A stretch of 64,000 bases of DNA from Chrysemys picta bellii (GCF_011386835.1 NC_088809.1:13454001-13518000); one strand, 5' to 3'; counted from the stretch's first letter, positions 37,801-62,019 are shown. The notes: generated from the letters alone by a model not told the origin. Program-made: numbers and translations.

Positions 37801-38941
37801 CCACAGAATAGAACACCTTGTAGCTGAAGCTGCTCAGGAAGTGGTCTGATTCCAAGCTCAATGAAGTCAGTGAAAATTCTCTCAGTGACTTCAATAGCCC
37901 ATAAAGTATATTTTTCCATGTTTTGTTCCAAGTGTCTGAAATTAGAATTTTAGGGCCAGAGTATGATTCTAGCCTACTGACTAGGCTATACCCGTTTTCA
38001 TAGATCACTATCATCTACATTACACCAATTTAACCGAGACCAGAATCTGGTTCTTAGAACAGACAAGCTTATTCCCCGAACTGCAACTTTTCCAAATGGC
38101 ATTTCTCCATAGTGCTCATACTCACATTATTTTTTTTACTGTTTGAGATTTTCTTTCCTGGTTTTAGTATTAGAGAGAGGTTTTGAAATGTCAGAAAGAA
38201 AGTCTGTTTTTTCACTTCTCCTAATAAGCTTGCACTGTGATATGGAAAACAGTTCTACTGCAAAGCAATCTCCAAAGGAAGACCCCACTTTGAGGGATTT
38301 TTCTTTGGCTTCCTAATCATTTCAGCATGCTAATTCTTGCCATTAATGATCACTCACTGCATCTGGTCTGTTATACAGTGATTGCCACTTGAAACGATTT
38401 CCTATATATCAGAACACACTTATTCTAGCAGGGAATTTGATCTCGGGTAATGCAGTTGCCCTAAACTGGGTAAAACAGACAGTGTTAGTTCTGGGTTGTT
38501 TATGCCTACTGTATGGTAAACATGGCATAAAAATATCCCCTTATGATCTGAAATCAGGGATAGCCTAACAAGATAACCCAGAAAAGATGTGAAATTTGGA
38601 ATATGCAATGACTAAAAGCAGCCTTTGTTCCGATGAGGTGGCTCAGAATCAGATTCCTCTGTTCAGCAATAGATAAGCCAGATCATTTGTTCTGCAAATC
38701 AGGTACAGATAAGCATGGGTGGTGGAATTAGGTGAGCTGCCGCACACCCCTGCCCCGAACTAGTAATAACAACACAAATACATGGCTTCCGCCTTCAGTA
38801 CCCCCCGACCCTCCCTATAAAAATTGCTCCAGCACCTCTGCAGATAAGAAAACAGGGAGAAAAATATGATAAATAATTTAACCTTCCTTGTATAAAGAAC
38901 AGGAGTACTTGTGGCACCTTAGAGACTAACAATTTATTAGA

Positions 38942-38981
38942 GCATAAGCTTTCATGGGCTACTGCCCACTTCTTCGGATGC
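38942..38981 (-). ncRNA. Minimal hammerhead ribozyme motif (U4C variant)
   Basis: Minus strand reads GCAT-CCGAAGA-A-GTGGGC-AGTA-GCCCAT-GAA-AGCT-T-ATGC. Structure inferred by eye; activity untested. Confidence 0.65.
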
Positions 38982-39171
38982 ATATAGAGTGGAACATATA
39001 TTGAGGAGATATATATACACACATACAGAGAGCATGAACAAACAAACAAAAAATTGTGGGTTTTTTTCTCTTCCTTAATTGGCCTCTCAGAGTTGGTAAG
39101 ACAACTCCCACCTGTTCATGCTCTCTATATGTGTGTATATATATCTCCTCAATATATGTTCCACTCTATAT

Positions 39172-39211
39172 GCATCCGAAGAAGTGGGCAGTAGCCCACA
39201 AAAGCTTATGC
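39172..39211 (+). ncRNA. Minimal hammerhead ribozyme motif, probably inactive (G12A)
   Basis: GCAT-CCGAAGA-A-GTGGGC-AGTA-GCCCAC-AAA-AGCT-T-ATGC; the catalytic G12 is replaced by A. Confidence 0.55.
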
Positions 39212-40350
39212 TTTAATAAATTTGTTAGTCTCTAAGGTGCCACAAGTACTTCTGTTCCTTTTGCGGATACAGACTAACACGGCTGCTACTCTGAAACCTT
39301 CCTTGTATAGGTTATCAAATTTTGTTTAAAATAGTTTAAACAAATACTTAAAAAAAGAAGAAGACATAACTGAATCGGCACTATTGTGTGCAGTCAATAG
39401 ACAGTCTTTAAATAAATCTTTTTCTTTCAAAGAGAAATAATATAGTGAAAAACAACAGCCTGCCTTCCATTCTGGAAATAATCAGTCTTCTAGTAAGTAA
39501 TCCATCATTTCAAACTCCTCATTCTTTCAAATAATTATTTAGAGTTCACAGTTTATTAATTTGACAGCGCATCTCATCTACATAGTATGTTAAAAAGCTT
39601 ACATTTAATCAGAAAATCAGCACCACGGCTTGCTGAACAATGACACCTTCTCTCGCTTCTTTGATTTAACTGATTTCAACACGCTTATGAAGGTCCTTTA
39701 TTTATATGCAGGTAGTGCAAGTTAATGCAAAACACATTAACTAATCTTAAATGCCACATTGGCGAGTAACGGAGCTGGGCAAGCTGTTCGTAGGGAATAA
39801 TTTATCCAATGTATTTAGCCCCATTTTTCTGCTTATGAATTATCAGCAAACAGATACATATAATTGTTTTATGAGCACTTTATGTTAACATCTTGTAACC
39901 CAGGGGTATTTGCATAAGCTGTATTGCAGTTGTACCTAGAAATGTCAGTAATGGAATTATGCTAAGCACTGTACTCATCAGAACAATAAGATGACCCTTG
40001 CTCCATACAGTTTACAAGCTAAGTAATAATAGGAGTTAACAGTAGGGTAATTATTGAACTATTCATTTCAACTATGTATTCAACTGTTCATTATTTGTGG
40101 TCTGTGATTGGTTGCTTCAATTCCATGGTATAGTTTCAGCTCCTTGATCTGATGACTAAAACTGCATAAAATGAGGATGAACACCGTTGGTGCAAATGAT
40201 ATTTGCGAACAAATACCCTGGATCACCAGCAAATAGTAGTATTTGCATGAAAAGTAGCCATTCCCCAATGTCACTCATCTGAATGAGAGCCCAGGAGCAC
40301 AAATGTTACTGCGAAAACTACTGTGATTTAAACAGTTATTTGTAATTCGA

Positions 40351-59216: not shown

Positions 59217-61227
59217 TCCTAGACACCAAATGAGCGAGTAATGAGAGGTGTAACTCATTCCTCGTCTGAGCTATCTAATCCCCTGAATTCAGGAAGGTGA
59301 GATGGTGCTGCAGCTTTCACCCTGCCTTGTGGTTTTCTGCTTGGAGGGTGGGGGGTAAGGAGCTTTATCTTTTGGCCAGAGCTTTACAGGAGATTTATCA
59401 CAGGAAGCTGCTGGGAGTTCACACTGAATTGACTGTCCTGCCTACACTCCCTTCTCAGCCCGTGCTGCTCATTCTTCGAGTTCTGCAGACCCACATATCT
59501 ACAGGCCCTTTAGCAGAGGGAAAGCTGTGGCTGCTCGCCACAGCTGGAACGTTCCCAAGAGCGGCCCAGAGCCTGCAGTTACAGTGGCGGAAGACAGGGC
59601 GGTACGTCTGGTTCTGTATGTCCAGCATTACGTCAGGCCTTTGGCAATTCTTCAATTAGTAGTCACTCGAAGACCAGAAAAGGCTTATAAGCGCCAGAAG
59701 CTCAAGTGGAAATTAAGGGGTGCATAGTCTTGAGAGCAGGACCTCTGTACACAGAAGTGAATTTCATCTGCAATATATTGCCTGTTGGATGGGAAGAGCT
59801 AATATTTTTCGATGAAAACGATGAACTTTTTCCCTGCATAAAAAGAATATTGTCGGTAAAAACACTAGAATCAGAGTGGGTGAGAATGCTCCCTTCACCC
59901 TTCCTTATTGGAGTGGAGATAATGGGCAGGGACAATAAATCATTTTCTATCAGGAGAGAGCAAGAGAGTGAGCAGCATAAGCGACATGACTGCCTGCTTG
60001 CAATTTCCCTTCCTTAAAAGAGACAGCTCTAAATTGCTCACACCACTGCAACTCTAATAGAAGAAAATGGTGTAAATGTCTGGCACACAATGCGTCAGAA
60101 AACTAGACTGACATTTCCTATAAAACATCCTCCGGCACCTACAGTAAATGCGGCACTGACAACAACGTGGAGGAAACGTTCTAAATTCACAATAGTACCA
60201 ATTTCTGTGGTTAAAATAAACGTTTTTCCTGATTGGCTATTTGTCAACAGTGGAAATATTTCTTTCAGCCACACAACAATAATGCTGACTGAAGAATAAA
60301 ATCAATCTTAATACAATGGGGATACCGACCGATATAAATAGCATGTGACCAAGCACATGGGCGCATGGGAATTGGTATGTTGCTTTATTTCTAAAGCTAT
60401 GCTTCTAAGACATTTTCCAGGGTCAGTCTTATTCTATTTCTTCCTTTGCTCTGAGTTAACAATATTTTTACCTGGAAATATCCTTTGTTTAAAAATTCCC
60501 CACTTTCAGTAGTCCCTGTGGTTTTTGCGCATAGATTCTGTGGTATTGTGTGAGCCATCCAGGGTCTTTCACGGATCCTGCAAGTTATGCAGGTGCTTCC
60601 TTGTTCCCTGAAAGCAGGGAAGAAATGGACCCATCTTTATGTGTGGCTTCCTCCTTCCCATTTGCCAGATCAGAGCACTTACCTCCATTTGTGGCTTGCC
60701 CTCTCCTAAGACCTCATCAGTCCAATGTGGTACCCTGCTTGCCACCCCTCACATCATGACTATCTGCATCTGGCCTTTTACCCACTTTATAAAGTTTATA
60801 GCTGTTCAGTATAAATGCTAAGATACATCAGCTGATTAGGCAGATGGGACAGACAAACACCAACTCATTAGGCCATGAAAGACATCATAATGTACGTAAT
60901 TAGTATCTCATAATTCCAACCTCAACCTCCAAAACTAGTTTAAGGCACATCTCCTTTCCAGGACCGACTGAATATATGGAATTTGGGGTATATATGTCAA
61001 GCCATTTGGGAGATGTGAAAACCAACCAAACACACTAAGAAATAAAATTAAGGATATATTCCAAGAGTGAACTCCACTTAAGATTTGAACCTCTCAGAAG
61101 TTTTCTCTGATTCATCCCCAGACTGAAGATCTTGCAGGTGGAATTTCAAGCAGATCAGTTTCATTCTGGCAAAGTGACGGTTGGGTGGGTAAAAATCCCA
61201 CATCATGCTAATTACGTTCTCTTCACG

Positions 61228-61398
61228 AAAACAACAAGGAGTCCAGTGGCACCTTAAAGACTAACAAGTGCATCTGAAGAAGTGGGTTTTTTACCCACGA
61301 AAGCTTATGCCCAAATAAATCTGTTAGTCTTTAAGGTGCCACCGGACTCCTTGTTGTTTTTGTGGATACAGACTAACACGGCTACCCCCTGATACTTG
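61228..61398 (+). mobile_element. 171-bp PLE-derived hairpin mini-element
   Basis: Inverted arms 61228-61266 / 61322-61360, 38-nt tail, perfect 10-bp TSD TCTCTTCACG (61218-61227, 61399-61408). Confidence 0.92.
61270..61310 (+). ncRNA. Minimal type-I hammerhead ribozyme motif with intact core
   Basis: GCAT-CTGAAGA-A-GTGGGT-TTTTT-ACCCAC-GAA-AGCT-T-ATGC. Stem I GCAU/AUGC, CUGANGA box, 6-bp stem II, GAAA box, palindromic AGCU stem III. Predicted cleavage after U at 61306. Confidence 0.8.
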
Positions 61399-62019
61399 TC
61401 TCTTCACGCATTCACAGGCCTAATAAAACCTTATGAATAAATTATATGCTTTTCAGCCTCATATTTTTCAGAGTGATCAATGTAACAATATAGCATAATA
61501 GATCTCCCACTATCTCACTCAGTGGGTCGCAGCCTGTGGACAACAAGCTGCAGAATGTCTTGTAAAATCAGCAGACATGACAGTCACAGGAACTATACTG
61601 CTATGTGCTGACAGGCAAGGTGCTAAAGAAAGAATTTCATGTACAATCCTGCCATCAGATATTCCTGTCTGTAGCCTGATTTACTCTTTTAGTCCAAAGA
61701 ATTTCAGTTATTGTCCTGCCATCGGGTATCCATATCAGTACTCAGGGTTTAGAGAGTTGAAGATCAAACAAAGCTCAAGCCAAGTACATTTAGAATGACA
61801 ACAAACAATGCTTATCGCTCAGCCACAAGGGGACATTTTATAGTAGGTGTCTGCATTTGGCTAGTACTAAGGTATTATAAAAACAACATACAACCAAACC
61901 TGGGCTATTTTAAGGCTCTGGTAACAAGTACCAAGCATTCAGACTTTCCTTTCATAAGATTAAAAACACAGCTAAGTATTTATTTATCTAAGCTTTTTAT
62001 AAGGCCCCCATTTCCATAG

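What the first reader, a model, noticed from the sequence alone, without database searches (positions are those of the whole stretch)
61218..61408. 171-bp mobile hairpin presenting an intact hammerhead ribozyme in its loop
Seen: between 10-bp TSDs, arms 61228-61266 and 61322-61360 form a 39-bp stem with one A-C mismatch. Through a 3x11-nt internal loop the stem closes onto GCAU/AUGC stem I of a hammerhead with all core residues (CUGAAGA, GAAA, U16.1, H17 = U; predicted cut after 61306). An unpaired 38-nt tail follows. Established: PLE hammerheads are minimal with a palindromic stem III (here AGCU) thought to need dimerisation, and an extra A between A9 and G10.1 is tolerated in a viroid hammerhead. 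Inference: the inversion stops just short of the ribozyme, so it extends stem I instead of masking it. That could make a stabilised self-cleaving cassette able to cut any plus-strand host transcript or intron crossing it, or a minimal non-autonomous retrozyme-like unit. Whether this exact architecture recurs as a family is the key unknown.
Basis: partly seen in the sequence, partly recalled or inferred. Interest (0 to 1): 0.8.

Follow-up and report, generated by a model that had tools for sequence, protein, structure and literature searches.

The report
Truncated Penelope-element insertion with inverted arm
This is one young, ordinary copy of a very abundant Penelope-like retrotransposon end piece; both its hammerhead motif and its hairpin shape come from how these elements insert, not from a new kind of self-cleaving mobile cassette.

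Summary
In detail: 10-bp target duplications, a 39-bp stem with one A-C mismatch, a complete minimal hammerhead core (cut predicted after 61306) and an unpaired 38-nt tail.

The interpretation mostly does not hold.
- **What the piece is.** It is the last 131 nt of a Penelope-like element (PLE) terminal repeat. The own-genome search flagged over 1,300 candidate places. A sister subfamily lies just downstream of RT + GIY-YIG reading frames.
- **The hammerhead is inherited.** 40 of 62 sampled copies keep an intact core. The "extra A" is a published hallmark of PLE minimal hammerheads.
- **The hairpin is an insertion signature.** PLEs often carry an inverted, 5'-truncated partner and a 30-40 bp "tail" at one end only. 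In 28 of 28 clean head-to-head pairs, one arm ends at ..GTTGTTTT with no tail and the other 38 nt further on.
- **The inner joint varies.** This copy's exact joint is unique. A joint within 1 nt of it recurs at about 10 independently inserted loci, and about 399 loci carry the full double-hammerhead palindrome.
- **Cleavage is unlikely.** Single PLE hammerheads do not detectably cleave alone, and clamping stem I should disfavour the dimer form.

Best reading: a neutral by-product of priming on both target strands. The scan had already noted similar PLE elements in this genome.

The parts
61218..61227 (.). Left target-site duplication (TCTCTTCACG)
   Evidence: Exact 10-nt direct repeat with 61399-61408 (D3). 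Other copies have their own 7-15 bp TSDs.
61228..61266 (-). Inverted arm: an antisense copy of unit positions 93 down to 55 (unit position p = window 61267 + p). It starts at the no-tail end (S1) and stops before the hammerhead.
   Evidence: 38/39 complementary to 61322-61360. The same outer boundary is seen in every inverted partner sampled.
61267..61267 (.). Joint nucleotide (A) between the inverted arm and the direct unit; its assignment is ambiguous.
   Evidence: several solo copies also begin (A)AGTGCATC. The exact joint is unique in the genome.
61268..61398 (+). Direct 131-nt unit: the 3' end of a PLE terminal repeat, made of hammerhead, body and tail.
   Evidence: 96-99% identical to many TSD-flanked solo copies. 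83-86% identical to units lying downstream of GIY-YIG/RT frames.
61270..61310 (+). Minimal type-I hammerhead motif: stem I 61270-73/61307-10, core 61274-80, unpaired A 61281, stem II 61282-98, GAAA 61299-302, AGCU 61302-05. The predicted cut is after U61306.
   Evidence: Direct reading, pattern search and fold. The features match the min-HHR description in PMC4209133.
61322..61360 (+). Body segment that pairs with the inverted arm. It ends at the no-tail boundary S1 (..GTTGTTTT).
   Evidence: About half of all family 3' ends in the genome stop here.
61361..61398 (+). 38-nt AC-rich 'tail', the stretch between the two alternative element ends S1 and S2.
   Evidence: Present on exactly one arm in 28/28 clean head-to-head pairs. 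Matches the PLE 'tail' of PMC8557442 and PMC11167929.
61399..61408 (.). Right target-site duplication
   Evidence: D3.

Best explanation
The 171-bp element is a single, fairly recent insertion of the 3' end of a Penelope-like element (PLE) terminal repeat. It was made by target-primed reverse transcription on both strands of the cut target.

- One cDNA started at the distal start site (S2, element end 61398) and ran 131 nt to the 5' end of the RNA, copying the hammerhead.
- The other cDNA, primed from the opposite target strand, started at the proximal site (S1, 38 nt upstream, at ..GTTGTTTT). It stopped after 39 nt, just 3' of the hammerhead.
- The two cDNA ends were joined and the 10-bp staggered cut was filled in, giving the TSD.
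- The hammerhead is simply the family's own motif, still intact because the copy is young.
- The 39-bp stem and the unpaired 38-nt tail are the geometric consequence of one S1-primed and one S2-primed arm.

At this locus the element most likely does nothing.

Shown: family membership, TSDs, the fixed S1/S2 ends, the variable inner joints and the link to RT/GIY-YIG elements. Inferred: the order of events, the two-cDNA route and the lack of activity.
For: 1. **Abundant family.** The own-genome search found 1,323 candidate places. The best are 96-99% identical and have their own TSDs.
2. **PLE origin.** All 20 sampled GIY-YIG loci carry a sister-subfamily unit a few hundred nt downstream of the GIY-YIG match (about 170 nt after the ORF stop in L090). 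RVT_1 lies upstream in L086, L072 and L076.
3. **Fixed outer end, variable inner joint.** All inverted partners begin at the same S1 boundary, but their inner joints differ: unit positions 60, 55, 53, 52, 51, 50, 44, 40, 29, 2 and 1.
4. **One tail per pair.** 28/28 clean head-to-head pairs have one S1 end and one S2 end, 15 in one polarity and 13 in the other. About 14 of these come from searches blind to the ends. TSDs flank the whole pair.
5. **Independent templating.** In many pairs the arms are not nested, for example S2 arm 52-131 with S1 arm 2-93, or 73-131 with 1-94. Each arm was therefore copied from RNA on its own.
6. **Literature.** PLE insertions often carry an inverted 5'-truncated copy and a 30-40 bp tail at one end only (PMC8557442). 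The Anolis PLE protein nicks and extends both target strands and starts reverse transcription at two internal sites that bracket the tail (PMC11167929). Its main start lies 85-92 nt 3' of the hammerhead cut; here S2 lies 92 nt 3' of it.
7. **Arm mismatch.** The only mismatch sits at a CpG.
8. **Intact core is common.** 40/62 sampled copies keep it, and the main loss is CpG decay at C11.1-G12.
Against: - No experiment or read-level data exist for this locus.
- For this particular copy the short arm is nested inside the long one. A fold-back of a single cDNA cannot be excluded for it alone.
- In vitro, no difference in start site between top and bottom strands was reported (PMC11167929). The strict one-S1-one-S2 rule seen here is therefore not yet explained by that work.
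- A joint within 1 nt of this one recurs at about 10 loci. This could mean a hot spot or a small propagating lineage.
- The copy sample is limited: 40 candidates scored per search, and the first search was biased towards look-alikes of the query.
Confidence: 0.8

Rival explanations
1. Fold-back route for this copy. A single cDNA primed at S2 reached the RNA 5' end, snapped back on itself and copied part of its own sequence. The element's endonuclease then nicked at S1 and the intermediate was resolved into the inverted arm.
For: In this copy the short arm (unit 55-93) is fully contained in the long arm (1-131), so self-templating is possible. An endonuclease that recognises the tail region is reported for Drosophila Penelope, as cited in PMC11167929.
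Against: It cannot be the general route. Many pairs have arms with content the partner lacks (L033-35, L037-38, L054, L055, L067). No microhomology of more than about 1 nt exists at this joint.
Confidence: 0.1
2. The hairpin-plus-hammerhead unit is itself a non-autonomous mobile element (a mini retrozyme-like cassette), transcribed and retro-copied as a unit.
For: A dozen full-length matches at 83-96% identity were found. A joint within 1 nt of this one recurs at about 10 independently TSD-flanked loci.
Against: - The exact joint is unique.
- The full-length matches have different inner joints.
- The four most alike (L004/5/7/8) share flanks, so they are segmental duplicates.
- The recurrent joint occurs with the tail on either arm and in three subfamilies whose diagnostic bases are present in both arms.
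- The shared A-C mismatch among hits is a search bias. The CTGG variant occurs 335 times genome-wide, with the same share carrying the tail as the CCGG variant (46% against 50%).
- The hairpin sequesters the native 3' stem-loop that holds the start sites.
- There is one cleavage site only, so no unit-length RNA can be released.
Confidence: 0.04
3. Functional cassette. The inverted arm clamps stem I, making an efficient cis-cleaving ribozyme that cuts host transcripts crossing the site.
For: All core residues are intact, and the MFE keeps stems I and II inside the loop of the long stem.
Against: - A single min-HHR shows no detectable cleavage, and dimers cleave only weakly (PMC4209133).
- The Anolis PLE hammerhead is inactive without the element's protein (PMC11167929).
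- Helix III here is AGCU with no loop, so an active fold needs a second copy with swapped stem I pairing. An intramolecular clamp opposes that (inference).
- The RNA-labelled contigs laid (the run type is a guess) do not cover the flanks of this locus.
- 35% of sampled copies have lost the core, so there is no sign of selection on copies.
Confidence: 0.03
4. Two separate events: an older truncated copy and a later inverted insertion beside it, or a longer palindrome that lost its centre after insertion.
For: PLEs tend to insert next to older copies (PMC6765202). About 399 loci carry the full palindrome from which central deletions could derive.
Against: One exact 10-bp TSD brackets the whole 171 bp. 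The arms differ only at one CpG. The strict S1/S2 pairing across 28 pairs is not expected from independent insertions.
Confidence: 0.03

Closest known systems
5'-truncated Penelope-like element (PLE) insertions with an inverted partner copy and a one-sided 30-40 bp 'tail' (Craig et al. 2021, PMC8557442; Frangieh et al. 2024, PMC11167929)
   Same: TSD-flanked; 5'-truncated; inverted 5'-truncated partner; a 38-nt AC-rich tail on one end only; hammerhead in the terminal repeat. The distal end lies 92 nt 3' of the hammerhead cut, against 85-92 nt in the Anolis element.
   Different: Very short: 131 nt plus a 39-nt arm, with no coding part. The A subfamily to which it belongs was not itself seen attached to an ORF; only the sister subfamily at 83-86% identity was.
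Minimal PLE hammerheads (Cervera & de la Pena 2014, PMC4209133; Lunse, Weinberg & Breaker 2017, cited in PMC6765202)
   Same: Type I; 4-bp helix I; a long helix II (here 6 bp against the 7-8 bp described); an unpaired nucleotide 5' of helix II; a palindromic helix III without a loop; reported in turtle and snakes. Opposed pairs 100-700 bp apart were already noted.
   Different: Nothing essential. Here only one of the two arms retains the motif.
Metazoan retrozymes (Cervera & de la Pena 2020, PMC7229834)
   Same: Non-coding elements that bear a hammerhead and presumably depend on a retrotransposon's enzymes.
   Different: Retrozymes are tandem repeats with one ribozyme per unit, and they release 170-400 nt linear and circular RNAs. 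This element has one ribozyme, no direct repeat and no evidence of circles.
LINE-1 'twin priming' inversions
   Same: An inverted 5' segment made by priming cDNA from both target strands, joined internally, with the TSD kept.
   Different: In L1 the two segments are adjacent parts of the element and do not form a hairpin. Here both arms copy the same 3' region from two fixed start sites 38 nt apart.

Membership tests
Penelope-like element (PLE) terminal-repeat insertion | Minimal type-I hammerhead: short helix I, long helix II, unpaired nt 5' of helix II, loop-less palindromic helix III | tested here: met
   Criteria taken from PMC4209133. Helix II is 6 bp here against the 7-8 bp described.
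Penelope-like element (PLE) terminal-repeat insertion | The unit lies in the repeat downstream of an RT + GIY-YIG reading frame | tested here: met
   Met for the sister subfamily only (83-86% identical to this unit; 93-96% to the window's second copy). 20/20 GIY-YIG loci carry the unit downstream, with RVT_1 upstream in three. Not shown for the A subfamily itself.
Penelope-like element (PLE) terminal-repeat insertion | A 30-40 bp tail at only one end of the insertion | tested here: met
   38-nt tail at 61361-61398, absent from the inverted arm. 28/28 clean pairs are heterotypic. The window's second copy is likewise.
Penelope-like element (PLE) terminal-repeat insertion | Inverted 5'-truncated copy adjacent at the 5' end, with the whole flanked by a TSD | tested here: met
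Rfam hammerhead families (type I/III, HH9, HH10, type II models) | Score at or above the gathering threshold of a hammerhead covariance model | tested here: not met
   No hammerhead hit at gathering score or at E <= 10 on 331 nt. These models expect a helix III hairpin, so this says little about the minimal motif.
Retrozyme | Two same-strand ribozyme sites (tandem or LTR-like direct repeats) that bracket a unit to be excised | tested here: not met
   One hammerhead pattern in the element and no direct repeat other than the TSD and a 12-nt chance-size match.
Retrozyme | Expressed as unit-length linear or circular RNA | tested here: inconclusive
   Only assembled contigs were available. They cover the repeat but not this locus's flanks and cannot show ends or circles.
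miRNA precursor (mir-559 / MIR172 hits) | Score at or above the family gathering threshold | tested here: not met
   33-40 bits against thresholds of 70-95, and both strands score alike. This is a generic long-hairpin effect.

The most novel reading that the evidence does not exclude
The interest lies not in the single copy but in the population it belongs to.
- Head-to-head PLE insertions here obey a strict rule of one end at S1 and one at S2.
- Their arms are templated independently.
- Most short copies and about 399 palindromes end exactly at the 5' edge of the hammerhead.

Together this could mean two things. First, the PLE enzyme, predicted to be a dimer, primes the two target strands in a coordinated way from two RNA sites 38 nt apart. 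Second, the 93/131-nt hammerhead-only copies would be run-off products from the start sites nearest the transcript's 5' end. That would be a genomic read-out of steps of PLE integration not yet resolved in vitro.
Probability: 0.3. Interest if true: 0.5.

Novelty: already known. Interest (0 to 1): 0.2.

Why it matters
As a single locus it does not matter much. It is a neutral, young copy of a known kind of repeat, and calling it a new ribozyme cassette would be a mistake. Its value is as an illustration. Thousands of such copies in this genome record the outcome of PLE integration: two fixed start sites, priming on both strands, and joints at microhomologies. They could be mined to test the in vitro model of Frangieh et al. 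2024.

Tried and rejected
- **Rfam scans** (gathering, and E <= 10 on 331 nt) found no hammerhead, only sub-threshold miRNA-hairpin look-alikes. I rejected these as generic hairpin scores.
- **First hammerhead pattern** had a wrong spacer and missed the site.
- **A hairpin lineage?** The A-C arm mismatch is shared by nine independent hairpin copies, which suggested a propagating lineage. Genome-wide counts rejected this. The CTGG variant occurs 335 times with a tail share of 46%, against 50% for the 1,185 CCGG copies. Unbiased samples show symmetric or opposite states. The likely cause is the search's use of rare words.
- **Arm identity test.** Arm-to-arm identity within a locus (0.947) against identity between loci (0.936) points the expected way in 20/27 pairs, but the difference is too small to discriminate.
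- **RNAcofold.** Monomer and homodimer folds do not favour AGCU:AGCU pairing for either the hairpin or the solo unit. Two-dimensional energy models cannot judge the double hammerhead, so this is not evidence either way.
- **RNA runs.** Only assembled contigs were available. They cover the repeat family but not the locus flanks, so there is no information on expression or on ends at 61306.
- **Literature search** for a 14-nt string of the tail found nothing.
No full-length element of the A subfamily was examined.
- **Bacterial promoter/terminator scan** is irrelevant for this genome.

Full report
**1. The observation**

The sequence is as described.
- An exact 10-bp direct repeat, TCTCTTCACG, lies at 61218-27 and 61399-408.
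- Between the repeats, 61228-61266 pairs with 61322-61360: 39 bp with one mismatch, A61245 opposite C61343.
- The 171-nt RNA folds at -79.6 kcal/mol, z = -10.4 against shuffles. The MFE keeps GCAU/AUGC (stem I) and a 6-bp stem II in the apical part.
- Read directly, the motif runs as follows: stem I 61270-73 / 61307-10; CUGAAGA 61274-80; an unpaired A at 61281; stem II 61282-98; GAAA 61299-302; AGCU 61302-05; U61306 as H17.
- A pattern for this motif hits once in 64 kb, against 0.00 expected.
- Rfam reports no hammerhead at the gathering score or at E <= 10. The weak mir-559 and MIR172 hits are generic hairpin matches far below threshold.

**2. What it belongs to**

The own genome is 2.37 Gb, and the window is C19:13,454,001-13,518,000. 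A search with the 171 nt gave 1,323 candidate places. The 40 that were scored include many 131-nt copies at 96-99% identity, each with its own TSD.

I use unit coordinates in which position p equals window 61267 + p.
- The hammerhead cut falls after unit position 39.
- The body ends at 93 (..GTTGTTTT). I call this end S1.
- The element ends at 131. I call this end S2.
- The tail is 94-131.

Exact-pattern counts show 1,185 copies of the body end with the CCGG variant and 335 with CTGG. About half of each (592 and 155) continue into the tail. Both ends are therefore used on a large scale.

A Pfam GIY-YIG search of the genome gave more than 10,000 candidates. All 20 loci fetched carry a sister-subfamily unit a few hundred nt downstream of the GIY-YIG match on the same strand. 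That unit is 93-96% identical to the window's second copy at 39100-39300 and 83-86% identical to this unit. In L090 the hammerhead lies about 170 nt after the stop of a GIY-YIG frame. RVT_1 frames lie upstream in L086, L072 and L076. This is the RT / GIY-YIG / terminal-repeat-with-hammerhead layout of Penelope-like elements (PLEs).

**3. The hammerhead is the family's, not this locus's**

Cervera & de la Pena 2014 (PMC4209133) describe minimal PLE hammerheads. [quoted passage not shown] They note such motifs in turtle and snakes, mostly as single motifs in truncated PLEs, and sometimes as pairs on opposite strands 100-700 bp apart.

Among 62 other sampled copies or arms, 40 keep every core and stem I letter. 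The main loss is CpG decay at C11.1-G12, with 11 copies reading CA and 10 reading TG. An intact core in a copy that is 96-99% identical to the closest sampled copies is unremarkable.

**4. The hairpin is an insertion signature**

Every inverted partner in the sampled loci starts at the same outer boundary, the complement of S1. The inner joint varies between unit positions 60, 55, 53, 52, 51, 50, 44, 40, 29, 2 and 1.

In 28 clean head-to-head pairs at distinct loci, 28 have one arm ending at S1 and the other at S2. There are 15 in one polarity and 13 in the other, and none is S1/S1 or S2/S2. About 14 of these pairs came from searches that could not see the ends. TSDs of 7-15 bp flank the whole pair, so each pair is one insertion event. 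The window's second copy (38895-39294, 15-bp TSD, older subfamily) obeys the same rule.

Many pairs have non-nested arms, for example S2 arm 52-131 with S1 arm 2-93, or 73-131 with 1-94. Neither arm can then be a copy of the other, so both were templated independently.

This matches the literature.
- PLE insertions are 5'-truncated, often have an inverted 5'-truncated copy at the 5' end, and carry a 30-40 bp tail at one end only (Craig et al. 2021, PMC8557442).
- The purified Anolis PLE protein cleaves and extends both target strands. It starts reverse transcription at two internal RNA sites that bracket the tail, in an AC-rich stem-loop 111-118 nt into the ORF. The hammerhead cut lies at +26, so that start is 85-92 nt 3' of the cut (Frangieh et al. 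2024, PMC11167929).
- Here S2 lies 92 nt and S1 54 nt 3' of the cut. The tail is AC-rich and pairs with unit 55-63 in the solo fold.

**5. Family or one-off?**

The exact joint of this copy (31-nt pattern) occurs once in the genome. The ten other hits within two mismatches nearly all carry the neighbouring joint ..GACTAACAG|ATGCATCTG... That joint has these properties:
- It lies within 1 nt of ours.
- It is flanked by different TSDs at each locus.
- It occurs with the tail on either arm.
- It appears in three subfamilies whose diagnostic bases are present in both arms.
- It coincides with a 5-nt repeat (ATCTG at unit 5-9 and 52-56) and a 2-nt AT overlap. A microhomology or pause hot spot just 3' of the folded hammerhead is the economical explanation (inference).

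By far the commonest outcome is the full palindrome centred on ATGCAT at the 5' edge of the hammerhead, at about 399 loci. The four most similar full-length matches (L004, L005, L007, L008 on C12) share flanks and are segmental duplicates.

One observation pointed towards a lineage. Nine independent hairpin copies share the A-C arm mismatch. This is explained by the search favouring rare words of the query, combined with ordinary CpG decay. The variant is common, its tail share equals that of the CpG form, and unbiased samples show symmetric or reversed states.

**6. Would the arm help the ribozyme?**

With AGCU and no loop, helix III cannot close in a monomer. The accepted active form is a double hammerhead (Forster 1988, via PMC4209133 and PMC6765202). 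In that form helix III, and by topology stem I as well, pairs between two units. A 39-bp intramolecular clamp on stem I favours the inactive monomer (inference).

Experimental reports point the same way. A single PLE motif showed no detectable cleavage and dimers cleaved weakly (PMC4209133). The Anolis motif cleaved only with the element's protein and was not needed for insertion (PMC11167929). Nearest-neighbour folding does not favour the AGCU dimer with or without the arm, and it shows the arm sequestering the native 3' stem-loop that holds the start sites. That also argues against re-mobilisation.

RNA-labelled contigs of the same species cover the repeat heavily but not the flanks of this locus. 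Being contigs, they cannot show ends.

**7. Verdict**

This is a neutral, young, TSD-flanked PLE terminal-repeat fragment. It was most likely made by priming on both target strands, S2 on one and S1 on the other. The S1 cDNA stopped short of the hammerhead.

The kind of object is already described. The population-level regularities are worth a specialist's look but lie outside the finding as posed. They are the strict S1/S2 pairing, the independently templated arms, and the sharp 5' ends at the hammerhead edge.

Earlier notes of this scan had flagged the window's second copy (s1-325718) and a dispersed family of such elements elsewhere in this genome (s1-329893).

Noticed in passing
window 38880-39309: Second PLE insertion, from an older subfamily that is the one found next to GIY-YIG/RT frames. 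It has a 15-bp TSD (AACCTTCCTTGTATA), two opposed hammerhead motifs and arms of about 150 nt. The left arm starts at the no-tail boundary and the right arm carries the tail. Both hammerheads have lost the C11.1-G12 CpG (CATGAAAGC read from the left arm, CACAAAAGC on the right).
   Followed up: partly
G000 loci L012, L018, L024, L027, L028, L046, L063, L070 and others; about 399 palindromes: There is a sharp 5'-end hot spot at the 5' edge of the hammerhead (unit position 1). About 15 of 24 solo copies that reach it stop within a few nt of it, many with clear TSDs, and the common palindromes are centred there. This is not the ribozyme cut site (position 39/40). It may mark the transcript's 5' end, so that the 93/131-nt copies would be run-off products from the start sites nearest the 5' end.
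   Followed up: partly
28 head-to-head pairs in L001-L067: Strict heterotypy: every clean inverted pair has exactly one tail. The in vitro study reports no strand preference for the two start sites, so the rule is unexplained.
   Followed up: partly
window 61185-61204 (5' flank, outside the TSD): An 18/20 match to the antisense of the hammerhead stem II region. The 3' flank at 61423-61443 weakly resembles the GAAAGCTTATGC..AAATAAAT part. This may be an ancient, decayed PLE copy at the target site, or chance (E = 0.001 in a tiny database).
   Followed up: partly
G000 C12: 12,133,689; 12,446,691; 12,826,041; 12,969,584 (L005, L008, L007, L004): Four copies of one hairpin-type insertion with the same flanks, in both orientations within about 840 kb. 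This is a recent segmental duplication block on C12.
   Followed up: no
window 61629-61673 and 61696-61740: A 45-nt direct repeat at 76% identity, spaced 67 nt, just downstream of the element. Not examined.
   Followed up: no
L025 (G000 C6:79,068,887-79,069,197): A complex nested cluster of four alternating inverted fragments of the unit. It is the only sampled place that breaks the simple two-arm pattern.
   Followed up: no
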